DNA of 63,786 nucleotides, counting the filler, from Hausera hauseri (Eukaryota), in assembly GCA_046269625.1 (NCBI GenBank). It is 12 parts of 12 records of this genome, joined end to end, with 100 filler letters (N's around TTAATTAATTAA, not from the genome) between each part and the next. Parts side by side here need not be neighbours in the genome. Positions count along the whole stretch, not along the records: positions 7,436 to 13,502 come from JBJURY010145869.1; positions 13,603 to 19,417 come from JBJURY010184194.1; 10 more parts are not named here. One strand, written 5' to 3'. How positions within the stretch are numbered: the first letter of the stretch is position 1; the number at the start of each line of letters is the position of its first letter. The notes under the pieces were generated by a model. That model saw only the letters and a program-made list of their open reading frames with translations. It did no database searches and was not told the origin of the DNA. Position numbers and translations under genes: made by a program. This document shows, one piece after another, positions 1-19,417 of the stretch.

Positions 1-3000
1 AAAAAACGAATAAAACAGAAATATTACTGGCCTACAATGGAACAAGATGTAAAGGATTGGGTAGACGAATGCAAAATATGCGCAACCATGAAAAATAAAG
101 GCAAACGTTATAAACCTGAGTTAAAATCATTACCAGAACCAAGCAGTCCAATGGAACTATGTGCTATGGATTTTTCTGGACCATTCCCAACAACTTCAAG
201 AGGGAATAAATATATCTTGTTATGTACGGACTATCTAACTAGCTATCCTATCTTAATTCCAACAAAGGATTTACTAGCTTCTACAGTAGCAAAGAAATTC
301 ATAAACAGAATAGTTTGCCAATTTGGCGCACCACGACATTTATTAACTGATAGAGCACCAAATTTCCGAAGTGAATTATTAAAGGAAATAACCGACATTT
401 GTCAAACCAGCAGATTATTAACAACGGCATATCATCCCCAATGCAACGGTAAAGTTGAAAGATTAAATTATACAGTGCAATGTATACTATCTGCAATGAT
501 AGACAAAACCCAAAAGGATTGGGATATTCATTTAAAAGTCGTGCAATTCGCAATAGCAACCACACCAACAAGCTCGTCAGGTTTTACACCTTTCGAATTA
601 ATGTATGGTAGAAAACCACTTCTACCTATGGATATTCAGTTATTACCAGAAAAGGAAATTCCTGAAAATCAATCGGATGAAGATATACACGAAAGTGTTG
701 TTAATAGCTTAGCAAATTATTGGAAAAGGGCTAAACAAGCCATAAAACAATACAAACAAGAGTATCAAGAATATTATAATAAAAAAGCCAATCCTCATAA
801 GTTTCAACCAGGTGATAAAGTAATGGTACATTATCCGGTAACCAAACCAGGAAAATCACTAAAATTAACTCGAACTGGCAAAGGACCGTTTGTAGTAGTC
901 AAAACTACACCTGAAAATATTTTTATCGAAAAGGGAACTGGTAAAAAGACCAGAATTGAATGTATCTCAGCCCAACGAGTAACCAAAGGACCAAAAGAAC
1001 CCAAACCAACAGAAGAACCAAAATACTCTCTGAGATCAGTTAAACAACCAGTTCTAAAATCAGCTTGTAGCTTAGAACAATTATTCTTTATAATTATGAT
1101 TTTTGGTCTAATATTATCTACTACGGCACAAACCTTAATAACAGATCCTATGATTACAAACTTAGAACTACGAGTGAAAATTAACTGGCAGAATTCAGTA
1201 GATCCAGTAGATGCATTATTCGTAGGAGAATCGAAATACAAAGAAACCACACAATTAATCTTATCATCAGAAATTAATGAAGCAATTTGGTTATCAACCA
1301 AACGTTGCTCGACTCCAGTATTAAATGAGATTTGTCTCATAGACCTCTATTTTTTAACAACCGAGATTTTACTAAAACCAAAACAAAAAATCCTGCCTAT
1401 AGCAAGACAGGTATACGTAGAGAAAATTGGCTCTACCTTCTTTTTTACACAAGAAAAAGACCATGAACCTAAATTGATAGATAAAGTCACAATAAAAAGA
1501 CCCACCTTAACTAGGGATGTCGACCTACAAATAACATATTATTTCCCTAGATTGTTTAAACATAAGTCCGGCGAAAAGGCCTTAAATTTCCATATCCACA
1601 TGACAACACCACAGTTTTTTAAGGTTGAAAAACGAATACTAATACCGTCCACAATAACACTAAAAATAGATATAACTAAACCAACCCCTATACCATACTT
1701 CAGTAAAATACCAGAAATTGATCTAACCACAACAGACTTGTACATTGAATTTAAAGCCATGCAGCTAGTAAAAAGTCCAATCACCATAACATGCATAGGA
1801 AAATATCATGTTATATACGCCACCATAAAGCAAAAAGAAAAAATGACAAGATGTAGTGATCTTCAACCCGATGAAGAATATTTAGTCATGTTTTCCCAAG
1901 ATCATGCAGCAGTAAAATATAAGACAGTCAGAACACCAACACGAAAACATTTAATTCCATTAGAAATACAACCATATACCTTAAAAGTAACCACAATAGT
2001 ACCAGATATTCATATCACTACATTAAAAACTATAATCTCATTCACAGTAATAACTGTATTCCTAATAACAATATCTATGCCATTTATGATTATCGAATTA
2101 AAAAAATGGATTACAGAAAGGAATCAAATTCAAAAACAATTAAAAACTTTACAAAATTTCGAAAATGAAAATATAGTTAATAGAAATCTGTTAATAACAA
2201 CGGCTTTATTATTTGCTCCAATTGTGGATGGAGATGTGGAGTGGAAGGCCAACCTTAAGAGTTTCGAAACATTGATATACACACAAAAACTAAAAAGAAC
2301 ATGCACACAAAAAATCAGAAATGCACACAAGCAAAAAACAACCATTCACAAATCAATAAAAATCAATCAATGCAAGGTAACCACCTACCTTGCAAACGGG
2401 CCATTAAATACGACCCGCTATCACTACTTTCTTCTTTTTAGTAAAATTATGGAATTCCTGAACACTCCAGTTTACGAGCCAGAAGGCGAAATGAATGAAA
2501 CAAATTTCAATCAAGATCCCCTAGAATCAGAAACCAACATCGACCTTGATCAAACTACTTCCGAATCAGACTCCGATAATTCAATCAAATCGGTGGTCCC
2601 TAACCCTAAACGAAGGGTTATACCACCACCAAAACAATTTAATTCTTCTTTTACCTTCCAAAATCCAACCCAAGGATTTGGATTGACCAGAGGAATATTG
2701 AGTATGCCACCAATACCAAAAGTTTCAAATAATGTCAAAATTCAATCAACAATTGAAATACGAAGAAAAGGTATTGCAATTAACGATCTTCCAGAAACCA
2801 AACGACTAAAAGTTCAATCGCAAGTATTAGATAACCTGCAAGAAAATGAGGAATATCGAATAAAAAACCGGTCCTGGGATGATCTATATGGAAAATTCAT
2901 TTTGATATATGATGCTTCAACAAATTTATATTCATCGAAATTTTACAATCAAATGGCAAATTTAATGGAAACGTCAGAAGATATTCTATATACAGATAGT

Positions 3001-4578
3001 AAATATATAGATAATAGCCTCAAAACTTCAATAATCAACGATAGAACATTCCGGATTATGAAAATAAATGAACCTCACTACAACATCAATTTAAAAGAAT
3101 TTCTACACCTACAATTACCATTTGAAAAAATCTTGATTCACGTAGCTCGTGGAAAATTACAATTCCGAGCACATTCAGATCTTTATGATAGCGTGAATCC
3201 GCACAAAACGATCATCGCATCGAAAAATTCAATAAGGATCAAAGAAACTGCATTTAAGACTGACATCTATTTCAGAGTATTACTACATCCAGTGGTACTG
3301 GGAATAGAGGTCTGTCAGGAAATAGATGATAAAATAGGTCTAAAAGATCCAATTTTTTATCAAACTCCACCAAAAGAGGTGAATAATTATCAATTAACTA
3401 ACAATACTAATTATAGATACGTGGCAGTTTCCCTATCCTATGCTTCTAACGGAGATCCACTACCAGTAGAAGTCATAATTACAGATCAAAATAGACTGAT
3501 TGTCTATCAAGCCTATATAAATCCCAGAAGAAGGATCGCAAACACTAATGAACACGTCCACGGATTATCATTGGAAATAATCCAGCAAGCAGAGGATGAA
3601 GAAGCAGTTCGTATGGAATTAATTAAGTACTTATACGGTTACAAAGTTATAAGTGCTAACACCAAGATCATCCTCAAAGCACTCAGAGTTCCAGAGAATT
3701 TTGTATTTGGAATCTTAGATCTACTATCCGTAGCAAATACAAAACAAAGATTCAAGGAAGAAAACTTGAAAATCAACTTGACGCAATTACCCAAAGTTTA
3801 CGGATATAATTATGACTTCCCAAAGACAGCAGAAAGCATCATACAAACGTTAATGGACATCCATAATAAAATAGAAAATGGTTGTACTAACGAAAAATGG
3901 GAACAGGATTGGGATCCTCCAGAAAATAATATCATAGACTATGGAAGTCTAATGGAAATACCAAAAAGATATCACGAAAACTATCCGTTTGAACAAGCAA
4001 AAGAAGAACCAATAATAAAAAGAAAATCTAAACGTTCAAACAGTGATAACATTCTACAAAAGATATCTCCGTCCCAAAATACAAATACTCAAATATTAAA
4101 AAATTCGTTTCTAAAAAAAGAAACTATGGGAGTTAAACTATCCATTTTATTGTACGGAGACACCAACAAAGCAATAAATGTTTCATTTATTCATGAGCCA
4201 AAATCGACTCAGAACCAATTTAATCAACTGAAGCTCTATCCAGATTTCGGTAAATTAATTGGAATCGTGTATAAACACCTCCAAAATAATACTCTACATC
4301 TAGCCATGATAGGGAGTCATCTAGACACTATCATGAAAATTGAAAACAATCCAATATTGGTACAACAACCAATAGCAATTCAATTGGATAGAAAACCCAT
4401 TCCCAAACCAAGGGGTGGAATAATAATAAAAATAAAAGGATCAAACAAAGAAAAGGTCCGAATGCTTTTATTCGCCACACATGACAAATTGGTTCTCGAA
4501 AACCTATACAGAATTACGAAGACGATGACGACGGATGAAGATACCATGAAGGCAACCCAATATACAATCCAGTTATGA
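1..4578 (+). CDS. pol: Ty3/Gypsy Pol C-terminus (integrase) fused in frame to an env-like membrane module and a large accessory region; 5'-truncated at the window edge
   Basis: The frame is open from base 1 (KKRIKQKYYWPTMEQDVKDWVDECKIC, integrase Zn-binding end). DDE triad AMDFSGP / LLTDRAPNF / GKVERLN; GPY/F motif GKGPFVV. No stop until 4576-4578. Hydrophobic segments at 1081-1128, 2032-2094 and 2188-2232. Confidence 0.93.
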   Translation, partial: KKRIKQKYYWPTMEQDVKDWVDECKICATMKNKGKRYKPELKSLPEPSSPMELCAMDFSGPFPTTSRGNKYILLCTDYLTSYPILIPTKDLLASTVAKKFINRIVCQFGAPRHLLTDRAPNFRSELLKEITDICQTSRLLTTAYHPQCNGKVERLNYTVQCILSAMIDKTQKDWDIHLKVVQFAIATTPTSSSGFTPFELMYGRKPLLPMDIQLLPEKEIPENQSDEDIHESVVNSLANYWKRAKQAIKQYKQEYQEYYNKKANPHKFQPGDKVMVHYPVTKPGKSLKLTRTGKGPFVVVKTTPENIFIEKGTGKKTRIECISAQRVTKGPKEPKPTEEPKYSLRSVKQPVLKSACSLEQLFFIIMIFGLILSTTAQTLITDPMITNLELRVKINWQNSVDPVDALFVGESKYKETTQLILSSEINEAIWLSTKRCSTPVLNEICLIDLYFLTTEILLKPKQKILPIARQVYVEKIGSTFFFTQEKDHEPKLIDKVTIKRPTLTRDVDLQITYYFPRLFKHKSGEKALNFHIHMTTPQFFKVEKRILIPSTITLKIDITKPTPIPYFSKIPEIDLTTTDLYIEFKAMQLVKSPITITCIGKYHVIYATIKQKEKMTRCSDLQPDEEYLVMFSQDHAAVKYKTVRTPTRKHLIPLEIQPYTLKVTTIVPDIHITTLKTIISFTVITVFLITISMPFMIIELKKWITERNQIQKQLKTLQNFENENIVNRNLLITTALLFAPIVDGDVEWKANLKSFETLIYTQKLKRTCTQKIRNAHKQKTTIHKSIKINQCKVTTYLANGPLNTTRYHYFLLFSKIMEFLNTPVYEPEGEMNETNFNQDPLESETNIDLDQTTSESDSDNSIKSVVPNPKRRVIPPPKQFNSSFTFQNPTQGFGLTRGILSMPPIPKVSNNVKIQSTIEIRRKGIAINDLPETKRLKVQSQVLDNLQENEEYRIKNRSWDDLYGKFILIYDASTNLYSSKFYNQMANLMETSEDILYTDSKYIDNSLKTSIINDRTFRIMKINEPHYNINLKEFLHLQLPFEKILIHVARGKLQFRAHSDLYDSVNPHKTIIASKNSIRIKETAFKTDIYFRVLLHPVVLGIEVCQEIDDKIGLKDPIFYQTPPKEVNNYQLTNNTNYRYVAVSLSYASNGDPLPVEVIITDQNRLIVYQAYINPRRRIANTNEHVHGLSLEIIQQAEDEEAVRMELIKYLYGYKVISANTKIILKALRVPENFVFGILDLLSVANTKQRFKEENLKINLTQLPKVYGYNYDFPKTAESIIQTLMDIHNKIENGCTNEKWEQDWDPPENNIIDYGSLMEIPKRYHENYPFEQAKEEPIIKRKSKRSNSDNILQKISPSQNTNTQILKNSFLKKETMGVKLSILLYGDTNKAINVSFIHEPKSTQNQFNQLKLYPDFGKLIGIVYKHLQNNTLHLAMIGSHLDTIMKIENNPILVQQPIAIQLDRKPIPKPRGGIIIKIKGSNKEKVRMLLFATHDKLVLENLYRITKTMTTDEDTMKATQYTIQL
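1081..2232 (+). other. env-like module within the polyprotein: signal peptide, ~300-aa ectodomain, TM helix, short tail, second signal-like segment
   Basis: LFFIIMIFGLILSTTA|QT signal-like sequence right after integrase; 21-residue TM IISFTVITVFLITISMPFMII followed by basic ELKK; then LLITTALLFAPIVDG|DV. Confidence 0.65.
3412..3873 (+). other. DEDDh (REX4/ISG20/DnaQ-like) exonuclease-fold domain with catalytic residues lost
   Basis: YVAVSLSY..VEVIITDQNRLIVYQAYINP...TNEHVHGLSLEIIQQA...AVRMELIKYLYGYKVISAN..IILKAL...INLTQLPKVYG...AESIIQTLMDIH follows the REX4-family pattern YVAIDCEM..RVSIVD..G.VLYD.YVKP....T.VSGIT...L..A.....V..LL.G.ILVGH....DL.AL...SLK.LA...H.S.EDA.ATM.LY. Confidence 0.7.
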
Positions 4579-4817
4579 CATTTGACACTTGTGATTAACA
4601 ATTTATCTTTAACATTTATGACGAACAGTTCATCTTTCCTTTGTATATTCTATTATCCTTTTTAACTTTTATCAATTACTTATTTGTATAATCCATTGTG
4701 TTATCTCACTTTTTGTATCTATCATTATTGTATACCTTTATTTTTGACTTTGTATTTACACATGTAAGAGTAATTGTCTCGTTGCAGAACTATTAATTTT
4801 CTAAGGAAAATTTCGTA

Positions 4818-4832
4818 ATAGGGGGGGGGAGA
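4818..4832 (+). promoter_or_regulatory. polypurine tract (PPT) of the Gypsy element
   Basis: ATAGGGGGGGGGAGA immediately before TGTTAGGG. Confidence 0.9.
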
Positions 4833-5616
4833 TGTTAGGGAAGAAAATAATAAGTTTAATTGAATTAAATAAAAATACGTGGTTAATTAAAACATTAATT
4901 AACAAAAAATAAAAAGAAAAATAGTTAAAACACCCCCAGAATGTTAAACTCAGAAAAAGAAGTGGCTAATGAAAGCCAAATGAAAATTTAAAAACACCCC
5001 CTGTTTTTAGACAAAATTTGACAGTTTAGGGTCTAAAACACCCCCAGAACTTAATTGTTCTGAATGAAAAATACGGTGCTAAAAAATAAAACACCTTCAG
5101 AATTTAGTAAAAACCGATTGATAACCAAACTAACCTAAAACACCCCCAGTTCAAATTTAGGGTATAAATACAGTAAGCATAACACCAGTTAGACACGAAA
5201 AAATTATAAAGCAGTTAAGAACACAATAAAATTTTGTGCTTTCAAGGATTCAAAAATTTATCCGCGAAAATTTATCCAAAGATATTTTTCTGGAATTAGG
5301 TAAAACATAACCCAATTCTTATTCATCTGCAACAGGACAATTGCCCGATAAATTGCACATTTCTTTTGTGTCATTTATTCAGTTGTGGTACCGTTCCATT
5401 TCGTTTGGAACTTTTTATTGGATCACCTGTAAATCAGATTCTTTGGAAATAAAGAAAATCCGATATTTGGGTAAATCTTAAAACAATATTTTTGTTGTTA
5501 TTTATTGTTCTTTGTTTTTAAATAAAATAAATTTATTCCCACTAACTAAATCGCGCTCGCAGCCGAACCACAAGTAGGCTACGCGAAATACACAAAAGTA
5601 AAGCTAACTTTCAACA
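4833..5616 (+). mobile_element. 3' LTR (~780 bp) of the env-like Gypsy element
   Basis: Starts TGTT after the PPT; candidate end AACA at 5613-5616 (no second LTR available to confirm it). TATAAATA at 5163-5170, AATAAA at 5225-5230, five AAAACACCCCCAG-type repeats in U3. Confidence 0.75.
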
Positions 5617-5934
5617 GTAAGAAATTAATTCTTTCTTATTTTTAATAATTGTTCATATAAGACTGGAACATTTAAAAAACTTAACAAAAAGAATAAGGAA
5701 TATCTTCCAAGTAAAAATAGTAGAAGTTAAATTAGATTACTTCTACGGAGTTTGGAAAGCAGACATTTTCGAAGAATTTCGAAAAATACATAACGAGGAA
5801 GAAGACAAACAACTTCTTCTCTTTTGCAAAACAAAATACATATTCAAAACAAAACTTAAATTTAACCCAAACTGTCCACAAATATTGGATAAGTACATAC
5901 AAGAACAGAAATCCATAAATTTAACTAAAAAGTG

Positions 5935-7335
5935 AAATTGATTGGATCAGCGAACCAACACTTATAATAATTTAAGTGAAGCCGAACGTGAAAACTGGAA
6001 TACAATAAGCATAGCAATAATAGATAGATTTTTACCGACCATGAGCCCTCAGCAGCAGTTAATAATTTTTTAAAATAGGTTCCAAAAAATGAACCAGTCA
6101 CTCAATTTGTATACTCTTTAAGACAATTAATTTATAATTATGTTAAAGCCATTAAATTGTCCAAAATGAGACAAAATGGTAATAATGATGTCGAAGAGAT
6201 CATTATTGATACTGATATTTTGTTGCCTACACAGTTCATGCGAGGTTTAGTACCAGATTTAAGATATAAGGTTTTGGCCGGAAGTCCAAATACATTTGCT
6301 GATGTTTTGAAAATGGCACAGAATTTTGAGGCTTTTAGACCTCTTAAGACGAATAAAGAAAATAATCAAGCATCTAGTGCTAATTCATTGCAAAATGCGT
6401 CACAATAAGAAAGTAGATAAAATCCGTCAAGCAGTCAAAATGAAAATCAAAACGGTAACCAAAATAGAAATCAATATGTTAATGAGTCACCTTATAAAGG
6501 AAATAGCTACCAAAATGATGGAAGAGAAGATATAAATAGAGCTGGTAAAGTTATAAAATGTTATAGATGTCAGCGTAATGGACATACCGCTAGTAATTGC
6601 AGAACTCCAAGTGATAAATTACCAATAAAAAATGAACCTACAACGAAATCTGCAGCCTTTAATGAAAAAAATATTGGACCTTCTATTGAATATTACTTTG
6701 AGGATTGGCATATGTCAAATCGAGATTCGAAAAAATTTGCAAAACTGCAGAATTCTATTTGTGGTACGGACGATGAAGAGCTAAGAGAATCTAAATTAAC
6801 AATTATTTCTGCCCATAAAGATGAAGTACGAAAATATTTTTCCGGAAATAAACTAACAGAATTGGAACAAATGGCTTTTGATGCATTGCCAGTACCAGTA
6901 GCAGCTGTTGATAAAGATGGAAACAAGATAATAAAAAATATATCTCCTGGCTATACTAATAATAAATCAAAAAGTGTTTCAGAGAATACCCCTGAAGAGA
7001 CACTAACAAAATTAAGAAAACGTAGAAAAAGATCAAAGTCACCTACAAGAAAACTTGCTGAAAACTTTATAAAAGATGATCAAGAAATTTCTGAAGAAAC
7101 TAAAGAAAAAGTTATAAACCTTATGATTAAATATTTGGATCAAATGGCACGAGGTCAAATACCTTTCGGATTAGAAAAGTTTGAATCAATTAACGCATAT
7201 TTGCAGCCTACTAGTTCATCAAAAGATAATTATAATAAAGTTATGAAAAAAGTTTACGATGTTCCAAAAGCAGAAATTCAAGAAGAACAACGAACAAAAT
7301 TGACAAAGTAATCGAAGAAGTATTAAACAAAGAAA
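5935..7335 (+). pseudogene. gag: degenerate Gypsy gag with CCHC zinc knuckle
   Basis: CYRCQRNGHTASNC at 6559-6600; capsid-like ..DRFLPT..QQQ..EPVTQFVYSLRQL; in-frame TAA at 6406 and 6418; homologous to the gag at 45500. Confidence 0.8.
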
Positions 7336-7435
7336 NNNNNNNNNNNNNNNNNNNNNNNNNNNNNNNNNNNNNNNNNNNNTTAATTAATTAANNNNNNNNN
7401 NNNNNNNNNNNNNNNNNNNNNNNNNNNNNNNNNNN
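7336..7435. other. artificial contig linker (44N-TTAATTAATTAA-44N). Identical linkers at 13503-13602, 19418-19517, 26038-26137, 30080-30179, 35048-35147, 39197-39296, 43279-43378, 48269-48368, 54158-54257, 59622-59721
   Basis: Same 100-bp spacer with six-frame stops occurs 11 times. Confidence 0.99.
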
Positions 7436-7649
7436 TTGAATCAACATATTTTTCCTTTAAAATGTTACATTTACTCAGATTAAACTTTTGATCTGTCATC
7501 TATGTTCTATTACGAATAAAATATTGACATTTGCCATCTCCACATCATTGCATTCAGTTTTTATTCACAATTTGTTTAGTGTCCCAACTTTTTTGGAATC
7601 CGGTTTGTATTTCAGGACTGTTCTCAATTCTGAGTGGCTCAAGAAGACT

Positions 7650-10130
7650 CACAGATGTTGCTCAAAAACTTTGACCAACATCTGATCTTGACTTTCAAAA
7701 TAAATCACCTCCAAAGTGTAACATAGTTCATTGTAATATTCAACAGTTGCTGACCTTATTACTTACTTGATGTTGACGTGATATAGAAGATACTAAATGC
7801 TGATAATAACTCTTTATTATTGCTACTGGGAAATTGTATGAAATTTAAATTATTTACATGTTAAAATAATAGAAAAACCACTAGAATCAGAATAATGTAT
7901 GCAAAAAAATTTTTTTCAAAATGAAGGTCCACAAATCAGCAAAAATATCAAAACTAATTTATTTTACTGTGATAAGAACAGATACATTTCTCTAAAAACT
8001 GATATTGGCTTTCAAGTACAGACAGTTCCAGTCAGTTTCTCTGGCTTGTTACAGGATTTCTTCACTCAAATCTATCTCCATACAATTTACCAGAAAAATA
8101 GCCAGTGAAGGTGCAAAAACGAATTTAATTACAACGGTCAATAAAAATAGAAATACTTTTCTTAGTTACTGTGATAAAAACAGTTCCATTATTCAAGCAG
8201 AATGGTAGCAAGGCTCGCAGCATTGGAGCACTGAACTTGGGTTTCAAGAACACAACAGACAGTTCCAGGTGTTTCCTCTTGCTTGTTCCAGGACTTCTTC
8301 ACTGAAGCCTAGGCACTGCTCGTGGAACCATAGCTCACATGAGTCACACTGGATCTGCAGAACGAGTTAGAAAACTCATTGATTCAAGTTCAAAAGAATG
8401 TGTGTCTGTTCCCATTTTACCATTACATTCTCTCATTATTTGATCAAGGAATTCATTATCTTTTAGAAAACCATGTGAAACAAGTAATTGTCAGTAAATG
8501 TCTAACTTTGAAACTTTGGTGTGGAAGTAGTTGAGATTCATCTAAACACATGCACTTTGGGTGTTGTACCAGGGACCTTCAGTACAAACTTTCATTCCAC
8601 CTCATGTACCACGTGATGCGTTTGACAATAACGATACTTGAACCGTAAAACCTTATCCACAGCATGCTATCAGATCCAGCAGAATCACATGAAATCATTT
8701 ACATATGTTGTGATACTACAATAAAAAACATACATCACCAAACAAATGTCCTCACCCAGTTTGTCACTGGAGGCCCTGCACCACGTGGTTTTGCCAAAGA
8801 ACTCATGGAGCAGTTGTTGCCCGAATCAAACCCTGTAAATCAAGGAAAACAAGTTACACCATAAAATAATAAGTGAACTATTTATGTGAGGAGTAGAAGT
8901 AGACTGCTTTGAGTTGACCTCCAGCACCAAACTCTCATCTTGAGCAAGCATGAAGGAAATAGTAAATGGAGTGTACTTCTATAGCACCTTTCTATCTTCT
9001 CAAGATACTCACTGACATGAGGTTTCAGTGGAAAGAAAAACTCCCTCATGACGAGGAAACCTTTACCTTACCCTAACCTTACCATAACCGTTACCTTTAC
9101 ATGCTAAGAAAGAAATTGTATCAAATGAAGACTAGTAATAAAACTTGAAACAATCTTGTGTTCTTACCCAGGTTTTGATGATTTAAACAGTATTTCTTGA
9201 ATTAAAACTGATGAAAGCCATCTAAGGAGGGCAAAAGACTGAAAAATATAGTCCTAAGATGCTCAGGTCCAAAAACTAACACGCTCAGTCTTGTCTGAGT
9301 TTAAAAGCAGAACATTTAGGGTAATCCAGGGTTTCTGTCTTTAAGACATGCTTGTAGTCTAAGTAGCTGATTGGATTCATTGATGATAGATGAGAATTTT
9401 TACAAATTGTTTTTATCTACCTTTCACTTATATGCAGTACCAACTGTACTTTTTTTTAGTCTTGGTTCATCTTTTGTCTTATCTTTCTGATTGTTATAGT
9501 CTTCTGAGTAAACTGTGTTTGTGCACAATCTTATTTCCCAATGATGCATATTTTTATAATTAGTTACAAAATCAAGATATTTTGCCAAACAAACCTGATG
9601 CAGTGAAGATTTGCTGAGCCATTGCTTTTCTTTCTTTGACCATTGCTGCTTTTGAAGAGTTCAAATGTTTGGCTGAGTGTCAGGAAAAGTCTTCATCACT
9701 TCTCTGGCAATCTAAATACGTGTAAAAGATGTAAACCATCATAAATGGTAATTCAATCAAATGAGACACAAACAAAACCAAACAAAAAAGAATTATTAAA
9801 CCAAGTATTTCTACTGAAGTTTATTGTCACTGTTCCTTCTCCTTCCTTGAATATTACAATGATCTATGTTCAATTTTGGAGGTGATTTATTTTGAAAGTC
9901 AACATTTGCAATTGTTTTCTCCCATCTATCAGTTTTTTAGCAATAAATTCTGTAACATATGGAAAATAATAAGCAAAATGTGAACATTTTTCAGAGGTGA
10001 TTTATTTTGAAAGTCAAGAGTTCTAATCTCAGCAACATATGAATAATAAAATGCAAAATGTGCAACTTTGAAAGGCATTCATTTGGAAACTCAACATCAG
10101 ATATTGGTGAAACTTGATGAGCAACTTCTG
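7650..10130. mobile_element. probable decayed DNA transposon bounded by inverted repeats
   Basis: TTGACTTTCAAAATAAATCACCTCC (7688-7712) recurs inverted at 9878-9902 and ~9994-10017; 7651-7685 recurs inverted at ~10099-10130. Confidence 0.45.
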
Positions 10131-10477
10131 GGCTGGGGGGTCTTTTAGGGAAGTGAGAGTGGTTTCTGCAAAGTAACATAGCAGTTTTTGTTTTTGGAAG
10201 CTTTTGGGAACAATATTTGACATTCTCACATCATGAACACACAAATAACCAGAGATAAGAGTGAAACTGAAATGGCTCAACACTCACAGGCTTTAAAAGT
10301 AGTTCTTGAAAGTATAACAGCAAGAATGACAACTCACAGAAAGACATAGACATAATCAACAGCTTTTATTGATTTATTTTCAGCTAGTAACAACGTTTAT
10401 TTTCAGCTTTTATTTTGAAAAGCAACACGCAGCGTGTCGCCGCGGCATTACCGTAGTACATGTTGTGAACGTGCACA

Positions 10478-10711
10478 ATGACGCCAGTGAGGGCTGCCGG
10501 AGCCGAGTGGAGGCTGGTATGTTGTTCTGTTGATGCAGACACAGAGGCAGCCAAAGCCTTCAGGTCCTCCATCACGAGTCTGGCTGTTAGTTCAACATCA
10601 GCTGTAATACCAGCAGCTTGTTCATGCACTGCAGGGCAACACGGCTCTTTTTGCAGCCACGTTGCTGCAATACTGTGGAAGAAATGCTCATCATTGGTTT
10701 CTTTGTATTAA
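10478..10711 (+). pseudogene. SWIM zinc-finger fragment of a DNA-transposon accessory ORF (ISL2EU/YqaJ-associated type)
   Basis: CSCTAGQHGSFCSHVAAIL fits the CxC..CxH SWIM motif. Confidence 0.6.
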
Positions 10712-10970
10712 TGACTTGACATGCATTTGTAATGATAGTGTGCACCTACTGTTTTTAGTTTGGAGCAAGCCTGGATGGATATTTGTACTCAGCGCAGCTC
10801 CTACGGATTAAATGTCCTCTAAATAGCTTCATTTCATTTTCAGACTTTCTATCGGCCACATTGTGACATCAGATGCTTAGAAGATGAGAAGTACCTCATT
10901 CTTCCCAATGGGCAAAGTGGATTCTACCTCCAGGTGAGTAAATGCTGTAAGTTACAATATATGAATTATT

Positions 10971-11209
10971 GGGGGAGGTTAGAGAAGGTGGGCCTGTGAT
11001 TGGAAAGGCTCAGGTTCAACTCCCGGTACGGTCAACATCAAAATGTGGGTGGAAAAGGTGAAACACCCACACCTGCCTCCACCCTCATTCACCCCACTCT
11101 GGGCCCCTGAGCAAGGCCCTTAACCTCCACCATCTGCTCCCTAAACAGGTCTCTGTTGAAAATGAGTTCTCGTGACTCAATGACACTACCTGCATAAATA
11201 AAGGGTCAA
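10971..11209 (+). mobile_element. teleost-type tRNA-derived SINE with LINE-derived tail
   Basis: B box GGTTCAACTCC at 11013-11023; core GGGCCCCTGAGCAAGGCCCTTAACC; tail ..AATGAGTTCTC..CTACCTGCATAAATAAAGG resembling fish Rex/HpaI-type 3' ends. Confidence 0.7.
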
Positions 11210-11732
11210 TGCAGGGGCGTTTTTAGGGTCTTGAAACATTGGGGGCTTTAGCTAAGACCCCTTATTCATCCTCTTCCCTATTTAAAAAGTGCCCCTCAAG
11301 TCTTTATCAATTTTTCAGACTATTATTGTTATATTTTGTTTATTTATCATACACAGTCACAATTAATTTCTGTCAGCAGTGGAAAATAACATTTATAAAA
11401 ACCATATACTGCTGCTGCTATATTTACTTTTTAAAGTGAACTAAACATTCTTTAAGAGTATTTGCTTATTTTATTTAACAAGAGCTGATTTAAAAGTGTG
11501 AGCCAGACTCCTTCGTTTTCTGCTACGGACAACTCTGACCTTCACTAATGGAACCAGTGTTGCCAGGTGAGAAATGTAGGATTATCGTACTAGACACATG
11601 AAATTATCGTATTTTGAGGGAAATTATCGTACACCCGTCATAACCAATATAACAAGTCTATTAATGCGCTATAGTCACTCTATTGTTAAATAGCGTCTAA
11701 CGGGCACTCACAGCTTTGTGGTGTCAATACGG

Positions 11733-11776
11733 GTGGGAACCAGACATTAATACGTATTAATGTCTGTGGTGGGAAC
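11733..11776. repeat. 26-bp perfect palindrome flanked by 8-bp direct repeats (miniature element or footprint)
   Basis: GTGGGAAC-CAGACATTAATACGTATTAATGTCTG-TG-GTGGGAAC. Confidence 0.75.
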
Positions 11777-11823
11777 TAATGAGGCCCCCCTTATTCTTCT
11801 TGTTTTGTTTTATGGCGGTTGGC

Positions 11824-12004
11824 TATGGAAGCCCATTTCCGCCACTCTATTAAAAAAAAATAGCAGAAATTATCTCAAAATAATTAGATAGTTTCTCATT
11901 ATAATGAGATAGTATCTCTCATTATAATGAATGAGATACTATCTCATTATTTTGAGATCATTTTTTTTTTTTTTTTTATAGAGTGGTGGAAATGGGCTTA
12001 CATA
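11824..12004. mobile_element. palindromic MITE with TA ends
   Basis: 27-bp TIRs TATGGAAGCCCATTTCCGCCACTCTAT with 2 mismatches; internal TCTCATTATAATGAGA palindromic repeats. Confidence 0.85.
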
Positions 12005-13776
12005 TTTGGCAGACCAACTGTAAGGTGCATTACGACCATTGAGCTGGAGTGTGGACAGGAGACAAACAGAAAAGAAAAGAAAAAACTAATTCTGTAAAAT
12101 TAATTTAATAACTCAACTAAATTCTCTCTATTAAGTTTGTATTTTTAAAGAAAATAATAACTTGATCTTTAACTTTACTGATATCACTACTAAAAACATC
12201 CCTAATTGTAAATTTAAAGGCTGTGTGACATGTGTAAGGAGTAATGGGGGTCTCCCATAAACCTTAATTAATTATTCTGAGACTAATTCAAGTCCAAATA
12301 ATATTAATTGATTATTTAAACACGGATTCTTTTCATTTTTCAGGATTAAACAAACATTCTGTGTTCTTTGAATAAGTGGTGACATGAGACGTCATTTATA
12401 TTTGACCCATCAACAAATGCGGTCATTTATTAATGAAATCATATAAAACAACATCACATATGTACACTTTGATTAGCTGATTTAATTTCCTATAAATTAA
12501 CTTCAACAGATAAACATTATGCTTCCATAATTTTCAACTGTGAACATTTATAGAGCAACAGACATAGTCATTAGATGGTAAATAACTTATATCTGAAGGC
12601 ATAATAAGCTTATTCTATTGGCGAGGAGAGTTTTAAGAAGAAAGTTTTGAGAGGAGGAGGAAATAAAGATGGATGGATGGGTGTCGTTATTTTGAAATGT
12701 GTTTAACCAGAAGTGACACGGCGTTCTCAGTCTCTACTCAGCTAAACTCAGCTACGCTTCGTAACATCGCCGACTCGTTACCTGGGAGTTGAAGGGTCTC
12801 TCAGGAAGAGCAGAAGTCCAGCTCGGAGTTCAACAGGTCCTTGGGCCGTCGACCAGCTGGTCAGAAGTTACGTTCAGCGTCCCCGCTGGTTCGCCGAGAA
12901 CAAAACAAGAGTAACGTCTATTTCTGGTTGCTTTTCAAAATAAAATGATTCCTTAGAAGGAATCATTGTTAAAAATCTTTAGAGCTTTTGCTCTGGTGAA
13001 CGGTTTCACAGTAGGCATTCTGTGAAAACCAGCTGGCTGAACAGGTCGTTGGCACTTGACCAAAATTCAGCAGCTCAAGGAGAAAGTTCTCTCTGCTCCA
13101 GAACTCTCAAAACTCTGACTCTGTCGTCCATCCGAGAGTCAAACTCAAACTGAACTGTTTTCAGTAAGTTTTAAGATAGTGTTGACGTGAAGTCAAGGTG
13201 ACAGATTATTTAAGAAAAGATAGAGAAAGTTATAGTAGCATTGTTTAGAAAAAAGACAGACAGAAGTCGCCAAATTCTTGATTAACTATAATAACATTTC
13301 TTAAACAAACTGAAAGGGGTCAACTTGACTGCTCTTGACCTGTGACCAATTTAAACGTTATTCATTTGCACACTCTTGAAATGTAAGATCAAAATTACTT
13401 TTGAAATAAAACATTTAAACGTATGATGAAGTCTAATGAGGTTTAAAAATCATTAATACTGTTTCACAGTTGATTTAAAATGATTATTTCAACATTGGAA
13501 ATNNNNNNNNNNNNNNNNNNNNNNNNNNNNNNNNNNNNNNNNNNNNTTAATTAATTAANNNNNNNNNNNNNNNNNNNNNNNNNNNNNNNNNNNNNNNNNN
13601 NNTCTCACTCTTATGGACCTATTTATGGAATTATTAGTAGTAGATCTACACTGGTGTCAAACACCGTCTTCAGATGTCGAAAAGCTCAATCGTCAAACTT
13701 CAGTTACTTCGCTGGAACGTCTATCAAAACGATTAATCTAAATAATGAAAATTGCGTTGAAATTCCATTTTGTTGG

Positions 13777-13956
13777 AAAATTGTCAAGCCATGTTTGAAA
13801 CCACCATTCGAGTCATGTTTGAAAGAATTGAGAAGTTGCAGTTGTACCGATGAAACTAGTCTCGGACTTCTCTGTGATTAAATATTCAATAAGGCCATCA
13901 AAAAACCGGGATTAGCTAAATTCTATTCGAGATTCTGCAGTCGAATTTTCGATTTG
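13777..13956 (+). pseudogene. MIF4G (eIF4G-like) fragment
   Basis: FESCLKEL...DETSLGLLCD*IFNKAIKKPGLAKFYSRFCSRI resembles eIF4G [30 protein letters not shown]. Confidence 0.5.
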
Positions 13957-15270
13957 AAGTGTTACAGACAACGATTGCCCTTTATGACCAAAATACTCAA
14001 AGAGCAAGGAAAATACAGTCCGGCAAAGTTGAGTACCATTGAAAAGCCATGGGAATTTAGTTTTAGTGAAGACAAGATTGATGAAATGTGGATGACAAAA
14101 CTTTGTGGTAATGTTCATCCGTTAGTCTGGGTACGATTACACAATTATCTTGTTTGGCCCGGAAAACTTATTGCACTCAATGAAGAAAGTGCTCTTGTTT
14201 TCCTTTTTGGTGACTATGATCTCAATATCGTTCCTCTCGGTTCCATGTGTATACATACCCAATCAAATCAGAAAAGGCTTACATCAAATATACTGAACTT
14301 AAACAGTCGTCGACCATCTGGAGCAGCTACTTCCCAAAACTGTGTAACAAAAGAATATCAACTTGCACTTGAACTACTCAACGTCCATTTGGAAACCATA
14401 ATGAAAAAATATCCAAATTTCTCCATTCCACCAAAGAAAATTGAATACAACGTTCAGAAAGGGGTCGAATATTATGAAAAGCTGTGTGGCAAACCGAAGT
14501 ACGACGCCGATGTTGTTGTTTTTGGATATGGTGACGATTTAATCTCAAGAAATGACAGTATTACTCAATATTCCGATAAATGCGATATGAAGTCAGATCA
14601 GGACAAATCAGATAAATATGAAGCAAACAGTGTTGCGTCATTTGCATCGTTCAATCCAAATTCAGTTGGTGTTCGAGATCAAGGAATTGCATTAACATCC
14701 ATTGACAAATTCCAAACCGGTGTACTTCAACTCCTTGATCAACTGAAAAGGGATACGATGAAAAATTCTTTTGGATCAAAAGCTTCAACATATTATCAAG
14801 ATGATGTTCCATCAAATTATTCTGATTTTACCTTTCAACCCAACCGAGAGAATGTGAAACATGTACCAACGAATAACGCTGCTGTACAGTTTTCCACTAA
14901 AGAGTTTCAAAAGGAAGAAGATCTCAGAAAATATATCACTTATCTTGAACGTTGCTTAGCTGCGTCAGATATTGAAATTCGACGTCAGGAAATACTATCA
15001 ACTATACGGCATGAAGAATACATATTAGAGTTTACAAAACAGCAGAAAGAATTAAGGAAGATTTATGAAACAGATATATTATATATTATTAAAAGTCTTC
15101 GATCAGAGGTTGAAGAGAAATCTTTGCGAACTATCCGAAAATTGAAAGCGAACGAATAGTGTGCATACTGTGGGAAATTGGCTCGATTTTATTGCTGTTG
15201 GAACACATGTTATTGTAATCACGAATGCAAGTCCAAACATTGGGATACACACAAATCAGTTTGTATTCAA
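13954..15270 (+). pseudogene. ZMYND8/ZMYND11-like PWWP, coiled-coil and MYND segment; intronless, with a nonsense codon
   Basis: PWWP WMTKLC..HPLVWVRLHNYLVWPGKL...VFLFGDYD (14089-14250). MYND CAYCGKLARFYCCWNTCYCNHECKSKHWDTHKSVC (15160-15264). The conserved Trp before the first Cys is TAG (15157-15159). Confidence 0.85.
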
Positions 15271-15507
15271 GTCAACAAACAATCCACCAATCGAACTAAC
15301 ATTTCCAGTACGCCAATTGTTCAAAATTCTCCCATTGTTCAAAATTTCTCGATTGTTCAAAATCCGCCAAATGTCATCCAACATCTTCTTTCTCGAGGAA
15401 CAGATTCGGCTAACATAAACATGGCAATCAATGGAGCGAATGTCGTCGATTACATTCTCAATTATTCAAGCGCGGCTATGGAACAAAAACCTCAATCGTT
15501 CAGTCCA

Positions 15508-15600
15508 CGAAATACTAGCACAATAAGTCAAGAACAAGAAAAACATCTACGGGAATTCTTTGTAAATAATCCATATTCCACTAAATCTCATCAAGAGTGG
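15508..15600 (+). pseudogene. homeodomain helix 1-2 fragment
   Basis: RNTSTISQEQEKHLREFFVNNPYSTKSHQEW; recognition helix 3 is absent. Confidence 0.55.
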
Positions 15601-16260
15601 GTTGCTGCAAATAATGTTGTTTGTATTAACAAAGATCAGAACATATTAGATAGTCGGAAGAAAATCAAAGTAGCCATGAACGATGTCTGTCTACAAAAGC
15701 TGATTTCTAAGCAACGCGAAGCTATTTACGAGAACAATTTGCTCTTTCTCTATTACAGTAATCAAGGGGATGCTGTTGAAAACATTGCTTCGGAGTTGTT
15801 CGTCCAGAGTTCGGATTGTACCCGAGCGGTATTAACGAAGTCAGCCCAATTGTTCAAAGAAAAGCAGACATCGCAAATTTCTTGAGGAGTATCTTGATTC
15901 AATCGAAAAGAACTCCATGGGCGATAAAAGTCTCATTAAGGTCCATTTAAGTCTAGAACAATTGTATTTGACACAAGGCAGTGTATCGAGATGAACTGTG
16001 ATTCTGTGCGCATTGCCGATTGAATTCCGATACCGGTTTGGTATTTTGGCAGCCAGAGCTAGTTTCTATCTCATGTTGGAAGATAAACAGTCGGTTGTTG
16101 ACACCTTTGATACGTCTCTCGAATGGTACCGATCACAAATCGGGGTTTTGAAACGTAAAGAAAAGGACATTAGTCCTGAACGATATCAATCATTGCTGCA
16201 AATTGCAGCTGCATTCTGTCTCCGTTATCGTATGCCAGAACAGGCAGCGACACCACTTAC
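15601..16260 (+). pseudogene. SRP72: SRP72 internal fragment
   Basis: ANNVVCINKDQNILDSRKKIK...KLISKQREAI...AQLFKEKQ and, after a frameshift, LYLTQG...EDKQSVVDTFDTSLEWY...SLLQIAAAFCLRY match the SRP72 TPR region. Confidence 0.85.
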
Positions 16261-17032
16261 AAATTCTGGTGTATTTTCTCTTAATAAAAATAACAAAATC
16301 TTCATATTTGTCTTCCCAATCACATGATGATTTTCACAATGACGTAAAGTGGTTTTCCAACTCTGCTACCCCAACAACAATCAAACTGAAAACAACCCAA
16401 ACACCATCAACACCTTTTCAGAAACAGGTTTTACAGCTTAAAAGGCTGCTTCAACAGAGTCAGAGGCCTCCATTGTCAACAATCCGCTTTGCTTCTGCGT
16501 CATCACTTAGTTCAGATAAACCTTCATTTAATATCGATTCTTTCAATATTTCTTCGACATCACAGACAATTTTTGACATAAATTCATCTATTCATGATTC
16601 CCTTCAAAGTAGTTCAAATTCCGATTTTAATCTCGCTGATAAAAACAGTCTCACTACCGTTAACAAAGGTGCAATCTTTCAACATGTTATACTGAATGAA
16701 ATGCGTAAAAACAATAACGCCAACGACGTACTTACCAACACTATCACTTCTTTCTTTCATGTCTGCCATCTTGCCCACAACTGCAACAATAAACACGTTT
16801 TTCTGTCGCAAATTATCATCTGGAATTCATTCCAAAGATAAACATTGATGATGGTGATAGTATATCCATTCGGAAATCAGGTAAAATTGTTGGGAAAGCT
16901 AGCTGCAATGTTAACAATCTGGAAGCCGTTGAGGAAATGGAAAATCAGGAAACCAATGATCCCGACTACAAATCCAATCTCGAACTTGAGAATTGTTTAG
17001 TTCCGCCGTATAACAAACAAGTGTCAGTTCTG

Positions 17033-17242
17033 AACGGACATTTAGAAGTTGTGAAATTCTTGTTAGATTCCGGTTCTGAAATCGAGGCTATGGTGGAATG
17101 AACAAAAGAAACCGCATTGACATTGACTTGTGCCAACGGCAAATTGGAAATAGTTGAAGAACTCGTCAACAAAAATGCCATGATCGAACACCGCAATATA
17201 TCCGATTACACTCCATTAAGTTTGGTAGCATCCGGCGGTTAC
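17033..17242 (+). pseudogene. Mask/ANKHD1/ANKRD17 ankyrin-repeat fragment
   Basis: GHLEVVKFLLDSGSEIEAMVE*TKETALTLTCANG...EHRNISDYTPLSLVASGGY; TGA at 17099 replaces a conserved Arg. Confidence 0.85.
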
Positions 17243-18039
17243 TTTACTGTCAGTATTCTCCATTTCTTGAAGAGCGAGAATCAGTCGACGAGCTTAAAAT
17301 TCGTTACAATTCTTCAAAATATCCTCCTAAAGTCTCCCAGAAACAATCTATTTACCAAAAGAAAGAACTAACATTCAAGAAGTGTCGACGAGACCGGCAT
17401 CTACTTGATCAACAAGGATGATCCACTGGGGAAAACACTACAGATGTGGCCAAATTCGACACCCAGGACTCAGATATTCAAACACAGGTGGGTGAGGTTC
17501 TTTTTACTGATTTATGCCCACCGGTGCGGTCATGTTCTTCGCATTTACAAATTCTTCATAGCTCCCACCATTTTCCACTTTAAAAGGTTTTTCAGCTTAA
17601 TATCTTTGGACACTCCTTTACTCCAATCATCACTTGCCACCGCTATCCCGACTGCACGCCCATATCTTTTGTTAACACGGAAGCAAACCGCACAAGCTCC
17701 TTTTGCAATTTACCATTTTCCTGGAATTGCTTCGCTGCAACTGTCCTTTATCTTTAGTAACAATCAGCACATAACGACAATTAAGGCTCCACTCAGTTTC
17801 ACGGCGCAGCTACTATACACCACTCTATCCTCCTCACTTGACACTGCCAATTTCTATTTCACACATCGAGGTATCACTGTACATACCGTCGACTCACTCT
17901 TGTCTTTTGTATGCCACGAACGTCCAGTCATCCACCTTATGCTCTATTTTCGCCTCCGGGGTAGATCGGATCCAAATCCATCCTGCTCGGATGACAAATA
18001 CACAAACTCGGGCAACATCTATAGTTTGCAACACTCCCC

Positions 18040-19417
18040 ACAGGCTCGAGTTTCGCTAAATTTGCCTTGTGTGGAGTTTTTTCTTGGTAAAAACAACTCC
18101 AGCACACCATGGCTCCAATTTCACCAACAGTGGCTTAAATCCAACAACATCACAGATTTTTTTGTGCGAGCCAATAGCCTTTTAATTCTGCGTGCCAACG
18201 TCAAGCAGCAGATTAATAAAATCTCCGAGCTGTTACAATCCTCGACACCTTACGAGACACTTTGTGAAGCTGTACTGCATGTCACGGATCCTTCGATTGA
18301 CAAAATAATACAAAATTATTTTAATGACCACGCAATAGGAAACCAAAAGCCATCCGACTTTTTCCAAACGGTCATTCTGCAGCTTAGCGCGCTAGGAGTG
18401 ACCCCTACGAATAACGCGGATTTAATTTGCCGTTATTTCTAATCGTCTTTGCCCACCTCAATTACAGGCTTACTAATCGTTGTTGACGAATCCGCTGCTA
18501 TCGAAAAACTGGCAATAATGGCTGACAAATCCTTTGAGATTCTTCATACTAACAATTCTCTCCCTGTTGCTTCTGCAACCACATGTGCTCCAACTACAAA
18601 TACAACACTCTTTACTCAACAATTGCAAATGATGCAGCAACAGTTTGACATGTTACAACAATCGATTTTGGCCATTACTACCCAACTAAATAATCTTAAT
18701 GGGCCTCGACGAAGTGAAACCAGACAATCACGGGAGCGAAGCACTTCAGTGCACTCTTCTCGGCCCATTTCACCTGGCGGACGTATGACTTGTTTCCACC
18801 ACACGCGTTTTCGAAAGGAAGCAAGGAAATGTTTCTCGGGCTGTCGACTTTTTAATGAGCGATACGCTGTAAATAACCCTATTTGTATATACCACAATTA
18901 ATATCAGTCACAGGCCAAATTATGTGTGCCTGCTTGTTGACATTACAACAAAAAATCTTCTAGCTTTTCTTCCTCTTCTTCCTTTCCTCCAAATTCTCCA
19001 AAAAACTCATAATGACGCCAGAATGTACGGCACCTTCTGGCGCAGGCAACATCGCTCAATCTTCTGGCAGTTTCAACACTGCCTCTGCAGTTTTTCTGTT
19101 GAAGGCTGCACTTTTATGTAGTGATACTTCACATATTGACTTCCTTATAGACTCAGGAGCTGCCTTTTCACTCCTTCCGTTGTCTTTCACCTTACATCCA
19201 CCACAACGTCCTGTCCTCCACTTTTCACTGCCAGTGGACAACCGTTGCACGTTGCAGGTACCACAGAATTGACTTTTGCATTCGCCAACTTGCCAGATAA
19301 GATTGTCTGGATGTTCCATGTGACCAACATTAAATCGCCCATAATAGGCTCAGATTTTCTTGCCGCACATGATCTATTGGTAGATTGCAAATACAGCTGT
19401 CTTCTCAGCAGAAACTC
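18040..19417 (+). mobile_element. CsRn1/Kabuki-like Gypsy gag-protease, degenerate
   Basis: GNQKPSDF gag motif, two CHCC motifs, AAAAAAC slip site at 19000, protease FLIDSGA. Confidence 0.85.

What the first reader, a model, noticed from the sequence alone, without database searches (positions are those of the whole stretch)
13603..17400. Intronless same-strand mosaic of fragments from at least five unrelated host genes
Seen: MIF4G-like (13777), ZMYND8/11 PWWP+MYND (14089-15264), half homeodomain (15508), SRP72 (15601-16260) and Mask ankyrins (17033) lie in tandem, all sense, with no evident introns. Frame +1 runs 13654-15885 across four donors with only two internal stops. The homeobox/SRP72 junction (QEW|VAANN) is seamless. 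Known: Helitrons, Pack-MULEs and LTR template switching capture gene fragments. Inference: serial capture of mRNA pieces with frame-preserving junctions, i.e. a once-translated chimeric gene or a source of regulatory small RNAs against the parent genes.
Basis: partly seen in the sequence, partly recalled or inferred. Interest (0 to 1): 0.8.

Follow-up and report, generated by a model that had tools for sequence, protein, structure and literature searches.

The report
Chained host-gene retrocopies beside a retrotransposon
In a flatworm genome, decayed intron-free pieces of at least three host genes (a ZMYND8-like chromatin reader, SRP72 and an ankyrin-repeat gene) lie head to tail on one strand next to a broken LTR retrotransposon, probably stitched together by reverse transcriptase; this kind of chimera is already known in other animals and plants.

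Summary
The core observation holds, but with fewer donors than claimed. Three host fragments are confirmed, all on the + strand and each uninterrupted:
- A ZMYND8/PRKCBP1-like copy at about 13957-15480, with PWWP, coiled coil and MYND, and two in-frame stops.
- SRP72 codons about 260-480 at 15601-16275, with one frameshift and one stop.
- Two ankyrin repeats at 17021-17250.

They abut a degenerate LTR-retrotransposon leader, gag and protease at 17251-19417. MIF4G and the half homeodomain found no support in any test. The stretch 16276-17020 looks coding-derived but has no relatives.

SRP72 homology starts abruptly at 15601. An independent contig of a public run ends at 15630, and summed contig depth rises about tenfold from there. 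So 15601 onward looks like a repeat with several copies, while the ZMYND8 part looks single-copy.

The closest proteins are flatworm proteins.

The best reading is reverse-transcriptase template switching among retrotransposon RNA and host mRNAs (LTR-mediated retroposition, Tan et al. 2016), followed by re-amplification and decay.

Not tested: parent loci, introns, junction microhomology, the 5' flank, and expression.

The locus shows no sign of function. It is a new member of a known kind and of modest interest.

The parts
13603..13956 (+). Coding-derived stretch of unassigned origin, in frame 1 and cut by the piece's edge. It holds the TAA stop at 13879-13881.
   Evidence: It has 1 stop in frame against 8.2 expected. 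There is no MIF4G hit in Pfam or PDB. A profile of the flatworm ZMYND8 bromodomain scores -1.0, the same as shuffles. A 10%-diverged second contig in run X1 reads A where the window has the T of the stop at 13879.
13957..15480 (+). Uninterrupted ZMYND8/PRKCBP1-like copy in frame 1. It holds the zinc-finger remnant, the PWWP (about 14089-14260), the coiled coil (about 14920-15156), a TAG stop at 15160-15162, the MYND finger (15163-15270) and a C-terminal tail with an 18-nt triple repeat (15316-15363).
   Evidence: PDB ZMYND8 9e-6. Pfam MYND_ZMYND11_ZMYD8 3.8e-9. BLASTP to Dicrocoelium 6e-26 and Opisthorchis 1e-22, colinear. tblastn map. Ortholog names. Tandem repeat.
15481..15600 (+). Unassigned in-frame stretch, either the ZMYND8 tail or unknown sequence.
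   Evidence: There is no homeodomain hit in Pfam or PDB at E up to 10. The region 15271-15600 has 0 stops in frame against 6.6 expected.
15601..16275 (+). SRP72 fragment, codons about 260-480. It reads in frame 1 to 15882, then shifts to frame 2, with a TGA stop at 15992-15994. The left edge at 15601 is both the start of homology and the start of the multi-contig zone.
   Evidence: PDB SRP72 1.3e-12. Colinear weak continuation. About 90 of 95 tblastn alignments start at 15601, and frame-2 alignments run to 16258. The X1 contig ends at 15630 and summed depth rises from 9.5 to 74-150.
16276..17020 (+). Unassigned coding-derived stretch: a frame-3 ORF at 16203-16841, then frame 2 from 16844. It is G-poor like the retrotransposon. 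AATAAA plus an A-rich run sits at 16283.
   Evidence: The ORF has 1 stop against 12.1 expected. Composition and AATAAA. No Pfam, word-search or Atlas relatives.
17021..17250 (+). Two ankyrin repeats in frame 2, with a TGA stop at 17099-17101. The 7-mer TGTCAGT lies at both edges (17022 and 17247).
   Evidence: Pfam Ank/Ank_2. PDB ankyrin and DARPin hits at 8e-15. Junction contexts.
17251..18442 (+). LTR-retrotransposon leader and the N-terminal part of gag, in frame 2, open from 17372 with a stop at 18440-18442. No 5' LTR is recognisable between the ankyrin piece and this ORF.
   Evidence: 17372-18058 has 0 stops against 10 expected, and its composition equals that of gag-protease. It is 70% identical to the gag fragment P0181 over the last 56 residues, and that relative is open where the window has the stop. 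Summed depth is 300-5000.
18449..18940 (+). C-terminal part of gag with two C..H..C..C zinc knuckles (about 18791-18844 and 18884-18940). It is broken by stops.
   Evidence: Translation. Same layout as P0181.
19012..19417 (+). Start of the aspartic protease, in frame 1 (-1 relative to gag), with DSGA at 19150-19161. It is cut by the piece's edge.
   Evidence: Translation. Summed depth reaches 9800.

Best explanation
This is a dead chimeric retrocopy made by reverse-transcriptase template switching.

Proposed mechanism (inferred): inside a virus-like particle, minus-strand synthesis on the RNA of a high-copy LTR retrotransposon ran back through protease and gag into the leader, to about 17251. 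It then jumped to co-packaged host mRNAs. This left partial, same-sense, intron-free pieces of an ankyrin-repeat gene, an unidentified coding RNA and SRP72.

The resulting non-autonomous element appears to have been copied several times. In this copy a further switch, or a later join, at 15600|15601 added a nearly 2-kb ZMYND8/PRKCBP1-like mRNA copy in frame. Everything has since decayed through stops and one frameshift.

Shown: the identities of the fragments, their strand, their uninterrupted colinearity, the abrupt junction at 15601, the rise in contig number and depth, and a retrotransposon part that lacks its 5' LTR.

Inferred: loss of introns, template switching itself, and the order of events.
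For: - The fragments are partial and internal. SRP72 covers only codons about 260-480. ZMYND8 lacks an evident stop codon, 3' UTR and poly(A).
- All fragments and gag-protease lie on the + strand.
- No interruption occurs over about 1.5 kb of ZMYND8 homology or 0.66 kb of SRP72 homology.
- The retrotransposon side is discontinuous. A coding-like pre-gag with the transposon's base composition begins about 17251-17372, directly after the ankyrin piece, and no LTR is visible.
- SRP72 homology and the multi-contig zone both start at 15601. The unique X1 contig covers 14107-15630.
- Six or more distinct contigs cover 15601-17100. This fits re-amplification.
- ZMYND8 has fewer defects per kb than SRP72, which fits later capture.
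- Precedent: LTR-mediated retroposition gives partial mRNAs, chimeras of up to four genes, and further rounds of copying (PMC5131818).
Against: - No LTR, primer-binding site or target-site duplication was seen, because the 5' flank lies beyond the piece's edge.
- Parent genes of this organism could not be read, so intron loss and junction microhomology are untested.
- The ZMYND8 part looks single-copy while 15601 onward looks multi-copy. One switching event cannot explain all of it.
- Summed contig depth is not a true copy number, as itself cautions.
- A depth step near 17995 and the TGTCA...TGACA ends at 17248/17991 could mark a 748-nt LTR. In that case the transposon would be a later, separate insertion.
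Confidence: 0.5

Rival explanations
1. Separate events piled up in repeat-rich DNA. First, a processed ZMYND8 pseudogene arose. It was then truncated at 15600 by insertion of, or recombination with, an unrelated low-copy repeat that happens to carry SRP72 and ankyrin pieces. Later a complete high-copy LTR element inserted at about 17248. The shared orientation and the in-frame junction would be coincidence.
For: Summed depth falls into three classes: 9.5, 74-150, and 300-9800. Possible LTR ends TGTCA/TGACA lie at 17248 and 17991, with a depth step near 17995. The in-frame join has a one-in-three chance.
Against: The stretch 17372-18058 is open in the gag frame, with 0 stops against 10 expected. 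That does not suit an LTR. All identified pieces share one strand. This account still needs a mechanism that put SRP72 and ankyrin pieces into one repeat.
Confidence: 0.3
2. DNA-level capture of gene fragments by a Helitron or a Pack-type TIR transposon.
For: Such elements chain fragments of unrelated genes, often on one strand. The stretch 15601-17100 appears to exist in several copies.
Against: The fragments are uninterrupted coding sequence over 1.5 kb and 0.66 kb, whereas DNA capture keeps introns. No long inverted repeats occur in the piece. The neighbouring mobile sequence is a retroelement.
Confidence: 0.06
3. Assembly or library chimera, for example cDNA contamination or collapsed repeats joined wrongly.
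For: The piece is a short contig of 5.8 kb ending in a very high-copy repeat. Only one public run holds it, possibly the source sample. No record spans the whole stretch.
Against: A Logan contig of run X1 covers 14107-15630 with 4 differences. It carries the ZMYND8|SRP72 junction with 30 letters beyond it, which is one short of the tool's bridging rule. All 30 depth bins are covered. Stops and a frameshift argue against fresh cDNA.
Confidence: 0.07
4. A functional or recently functional chimeric gene, or a small-RNA source aimed at the parent genes.
For: The ZMYND8 part keeps its MYND cysteines and PWWP core. It reads in frame into SRP72 for 761 codons with only two stops.
Against: There are in-frame stops at 13879 and 15160, a frameshift near 15885, and stops in every later segment. 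No RNA run holds the stretch. Run X1 shows a structural variant at 14107 inside the ZMYND8 part.
Confidence: 0.05

Closest known systems
LTR-mediated retroposition chimeras (Tan et al. 2016, Genome Res, PMC5131818; maize Bs1; yeast Ty1-mediated pseudogenes)
   Same: Partial mRNA copies from several unlinked genes are joined in one orientation to a discontinuous LTR retrotransposon. There are signs of further rounds of copying. Multi-gene cases are known, such as the mouse 'Super' retrocopy with four genes.
   Different: Only the 3' retrotransposon flank is visible here. Microsimilarity at the switch points and the enclosing LTRs could not be checked. One part (ZMYND8) seems single-copy while the rest is multi-copy. 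The host is a flatworm, and the papers read here do not describe this process in flatworms.
LINE-mediated processed pseudogenes and L1 chimeric retrogenes (template switching at the 5' end of the LINE RNA)
   Same: Intron-free, same-sense copies of mRNAs are joined head to tail by a reverse transcriptase.
   Different: The fragments lack their own 3' ends and poly(A). No LINE sequence is present. The only AATAAA plus A-rich run (16283) follows an internal SRP72 break.
Helitron and Pack-MULE gene-fragment capture
   Same: A mosaic of fragments of unrelated genes that may be amplified.
   Different: Those elements capture genomic DNA with its introns and have defined termini. Here the pieces are uninterrupted coding sequence, and no termini or inverted repeats were found.
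Flatworm PRKCBP1/ZMYND8 and SRP72 genes (Fasciola, Dicrocoelium, Opisthorchis, Schistosoma, Paragonimus, Spirometra)
   Same: Domain order and sequence match, including the flatworm-type motif VAANNxVCIN in SRP72.
   Different: The window's copies are truncated and carry stops and a frameshift. The ZMYND8 copy is only 26-30% identical to any listed ortholog, against 36-40% between cestode and trematode.

Membership tests
LTR-mediated chimeric retrocopy | Intron-free, often partial copies of host mRNAs | tested here: inconclusive
   The fragments are partial and colinear with orthologous proteins without interruption.
LTR-mediated chimeric retrocopy | Flanked on both sides by discontinuous sequence of one LTR retrotransposon | tested here: inconclusive
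   On the 3' side, leader, gag and protease without a 5' LTR abut the ankyrin piece. The 5' side lies beyond the piece's edge at 13603.
LTR-mediated chimeric retrocopy | Host pieces in the same orientation as the retrotransposon | tested here: met
   All identified pieces and gag-protease are on the + strand.
LTR-mediated chimeric retrocopy | Microsimilarity at the switch points | not testable with these tools
   This needs the parent mRNAs and the canonical element. The only observation is the 7-mer TGTCAGT at both ankyrin edges.
LINE-type processed pseudogene | Complete 3' end with a poly(A) tail and target-site duplication | tested here: not met
   ZMYND8 ends at 15600 without a stop codon, UTR or A-run. 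SRP72 is internal, covering codons about 260-480.
Helitron / Pack-TIR capture | Element termini (TC...CTRR hairpin, or terminal inverted repeats) and retained introns | tested here: not met
   The longest inverted repeat is 30 nt at 73%. The fragments are uninterrupted. Termini could still lie outside the piece.
ZMYND8/ZMYND11 family | A PWWP followed by a C-terminal MYND finger of the ZMYND11/8 type | tested here: met
   PF24324 scores 36.7 bits against a cutoff of 27. The PWWP region matches ZMYND8 structures at 9e-6. A profile of flatworm orthologs gives 6.5e-27.
SRP72 | Sequence match to the SRP72 TPR region | tested here: met
   1.3e-12 to human SRP72 residues 265-355. 48-51% identity to Schistosoma and Paragonimus SRP72.
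MIF4G domain | Match to the MIF4G profile or to MIF4G structures | tested here: not met
   No hit to the pieces on either side of the stop at 13879. The joined read-through with X has no reference and was not sent to any tool.
Homeodomain | Match to a homeodomain profile or structure | tested here: not met
   No hit for 15403-15600 or 15271-15600 at E up to 10.
Mask/ANKHD1 | Specific match beyond generic ankyrin repeats | not tested
   Only generic ankyrin hits were obtained. The resemblance of HRNISDYTPLSLVASGGY to ANKHD1 is from recall.

The most novel reading that the evidence does not exclude
The segment from 15601 onward (SRP72, unknown stretch, ankyrin, then leader and gag) is a still-mobile non-autonomous LTR element of a flatworm. 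It carries host exons and keeps picking up further mRNAs, ZMYND8 being the latest. If so it acts as a running exon-shuffling engine, and its ankyrin piece is read in frame with gag as an N-terminal extension.
Probability: 0.12. Interest if true: 0.55.

Novelty: new member of a known kind. Interest (0 to 1): 0.3.

Why it matters
If the reading is right, this is an example of LTR-retrotransposon-mediated multi-gene retroposition in a flatworm. The mechanism is documented in yeast, plants, insects and vertebrates (PMC5131818) as a route to gene-fragment shuffling. It would show that the very abundant gag-pol element of this genome can move host coding sequence. The locus itself looks dead, so its value is as a mechanistic footprint and as a warning for gene annotation. 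An automatic pipeline could call a false ZMYND8-SRP72 fusion protein here.

Tried and rejected
**Tested and found nothing**
- MIF4G: Pfam and PDB searches on both pieces around the stop.
- My alternative that 13603-13950 is the ZMYND8 bromodomain: a profile of seven orthologs scores no better than shuffles. The stretch stays unassigned.
- Homeodomain: nothing.
- SRP72 extending upstream of 15601: a few alignments extend, but residue-by-residue comparison with flatworm SRP72 shows 1 identity in 17. Rejected.
- SRP72 fragment starting at an exon boundary: partial predicted proteins suggest a conserved exon start 8-10 codons further upstream (RPSD...), not at 15601. Schistosoma isoforms gave no boundaries in this span.
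- Word search with the 425-aa ZMYND8 ORF and the 212-aa unknown ORF: no hits. Atlas: no lead.
- Rfam and tRNA scans, looking for an snRNA head or a primer-binding-site partner: nothing.
- Two metagenome scans for gag relatives, to find a canonical element: nothing.

- The look-up of encoding contigs, so ortholog and parent intron maps could not be made.
- The search of earlier findings.

**Not attempted**
- Read-through of stops was done only in local scripts, with X at each stop. It was not sent to the public tools.
Full report
**What is there**

The piece 13603-19417 is AT-rich eukaryotic DNA of 33-47% G+C. Frame 1 is open from the piece's edge to 15885 except for TAA at 13879 and TAG at 15160. 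For 13603-15600 that is 2 stops against 46.7 expected from shuffles.

Every later segment also has one strongly stop-depleted + frame:

| Segment | Stops observed | Stops expected |
|---|---|---|
| 15887-16327 | 2 | 9.2 |
| 16203-16841 | 1 | 12.1 |
| 16844-17368 | 1 | 11.9 |
| 17372-18058 | 0 | 10 |

So the whole piece is a chain of coding-derived sequence on one strand.

**Identities of the segments**

*ZMYND8-like copy*
- 13882-15156 matches the zinc-finger/PWWP part of human ZMYND8 structures (E 9e-6).
- 15163-15270 is a MYND finger of the ZMYND11/ZMYND8 type (PF24324, 3.8e-9, above cutoff; PDB 2e-7).
- The full-library search and name look-ups show that the nearest proteins are flatworm 'protein kinase C-binding protein 1' (ZMYND8) orthologs. 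These come from Fasciola, Dicrocoelium, Opisthorchis, Paragonimus, Calicophoron, Schistosoma, Heterobilharzia and Spirometra.
- The window is colinear with them from about 13957 to about 15480: CY..R..LP zinc-finger remnant, PWWP, coiled coil, MYND and tail.
- Identity is 26-30% over 490 aligned columns. Cestode against trematode gives 36-40%, and non-flatworms give 20-24%. So the host is a flatworm, and the copy is either from a distant lineage or decayed.

*SRP72 fragment*
- 15601-15873 matches human SRP72 residues 265-355 (1.3e-12) and Schistosoma and Paragonimus SRP72 at 48-51% identity.
- After a frameshift near 15885, the match goes on colinearly in frame 2 to about 16260-16275, residues about 355-480. 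There is a TGA stop at 15992-15994.

*Ankyrin repeats*
- 17021-17250 encodes two ankyrin repeats in frame 2 with a TGA stop at 17099.

*LTR retrotransposon*
- 18060-18940 is gag. It is 70% identical to an ENA gag fragment, P0181, which is open where the window has a stop at 18440, and it has two C..H..C..C knuckles.
- 19012 onward is an aspartic protease (DSGA at 19150) in the -1 frame.

**What is not there**

- MIF4G gets no Pfam or PDB support on either side of the stop at 13879.
- My own alternative, that 13603-13950 is the ZMYND8 bromodomain remnant, also fails. A profile of seven orthologs scores -1.0, and shuffles reach 5.5. That stretch is coding-derived but unassigned.
- The 'half homeodomain' at 15508 has no Pfam or PDB support even at E 10.
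- The stretch 16276-17020 has no relatives.
- The specific naming of the ankyrin donor as Mask/ANKHD1 rests on recall only.

So three host donors are confirmed, not five or more, plus two or three unassigned coding-like stretches.

**The junction at 15600|15601**

- About 90 of 95 tblastn alignments of SRP72 proteins start exactly at 15601, the V of VAANN.
- The 17 residues upstream share 1 identity with flatworm SRP72.
- Logan's contigs of the one public run that holds the stretch (X1) include a 1622-nt contig that covers 14107-15630 with 4 differences. It carries the junction and stops 30 letters after it. That is one short of the tool's bridging rule, and it is what a 31-mer graph does where a repeat begins at 15601.
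- Summed contig depth is 9.5 for 13991-15542, 74-150 for 15543-17094, 300-1400 for 17095-17870 and 2900-9900 beyond. Six or more distinct contigs cover the SRP72 part.
- The tool warns that summed depth is not a copy number. The pattern nevertheless says that the ZMYND8 part is low-copy, 15601-17100 exists in several diverged copies, and gag-protease belongs to a very abundant family.
- The junction is not at the conserved exon start that partial gene predictions suggest 8-10 codons upstream. That fits a break inside an exon.

**The retrotransposon side**

- From about 17251 the base composition (C 0.28, G 0.16) equals that of gag-protease and differs from the host pieces.
- 17372-18058 is open in the gag frame, so it is an N-terminal part of gag or a coding leader, not an LTR.
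- No LTR, primer-binding site or tRNA match lies between the ankyrin piece and this ORF. The retrotransposon therefore abuts host sequence without its 5' LTR.
- One caveat remains. The ends TGTCA (17248) and TGACA (17991), with a depth step near 17995, could mark a 748-nt LTR. The open frame argues against that.

**Mechanism**

The features seen are:
- partial internal mRNA pieces without their own 3' ends;
- a single orientation shared with the retroelement;
- uninterrupted coding colinearity;
- direct abutment to a discontinuous LTR element;
- several copies of part of the chain.

These are the features listed for LTR-mediated retroposition by template switching in virus-like particles. That process gives multi-gene chimeras, including a mouse retrocopy with four genes, and pseudo-elements that are copied again (PMC5131818).

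The lower defect density of the ZMYND8 part and its single-copy look suggest it was added last. I put this reading at 0.5.

The main rival, at 0.3, is a pile-up of separate events in repeat-rich DNA. DNA-level capture, misassembly and a functional fusion gene are each below 0.1.

**Limits**

- The organism's own parent genes, the other copies and the flanks could not be read.
- Only contigs, not reads, were available for the single run.
- No RNA run holds the stretch.
- Intron loss, microhomology, enclosing LTRs and expression are therefore untested.

**Verdict**

This is a real but dead mosaic, smaller in donor number than claimed, and most likely a product of a known process in a host group where the papers read here do not describe it.

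Noticed in passing
window 15316-15363: An 18-nt unit is repeated 2.7 times in the ZMYND8-like tail. It encodes IVQNSP / IVQNFS / IVQNPP.
   Followed up: no
window 14107 (run X1): The 1622-nt X1 contig matches from 14107 on, but its first 98 letters do not lie on the window. A second, thinner contig (depth 5.3) has the window's arrangement across 14107. This may be a structural variant inside the ZMYND8-like copy.
   Followed up: no
window 13861-13921 (run X1): A second contig about 10% diverged from the window covers this stretch. It reads A where the window has the T of the TAA stop at 13879. So a paralogous or parental copy without that stop exists.
   Followed up: partly
window 17022-17028 and 17247-17253: The 7-mer TGTCAGT lies at both edges of the ankyrin fragment. 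It could be microhomology, a duplication or chance, and it was found post hoc.
   Followed up: partly
window 16283-16298: AATAAA followed by an A-rich run sits right after the point where SRP72 homology ends, preceded by CTG|GTGTAT, which resembles a splice donor. This could mark a prematurely polyadenylated, intron-retaining SRP72 transcript as the template.
   Followed up: no
window 16390-16515 (run X1): Three indels among the copies of the unassigned stretch are each 3 nt long: AAC, CAG and ATA.
   Followed up: no
window 16844-18442: Frame 2 runs from the unassigned stretch through the ankyrin repeats into gag with only two internal stops (17099 and 17369). The ankyrin piece is therefore in frame with gag.
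   Followed up: partly
protein P0001 (ENA contig, 1756 aa): The top hit of the full-library search is an unnamed protein with at least nine tandem MYND-like stretches at a 75-residue spacing. It is unrelated to the finding.
   Followed up: no
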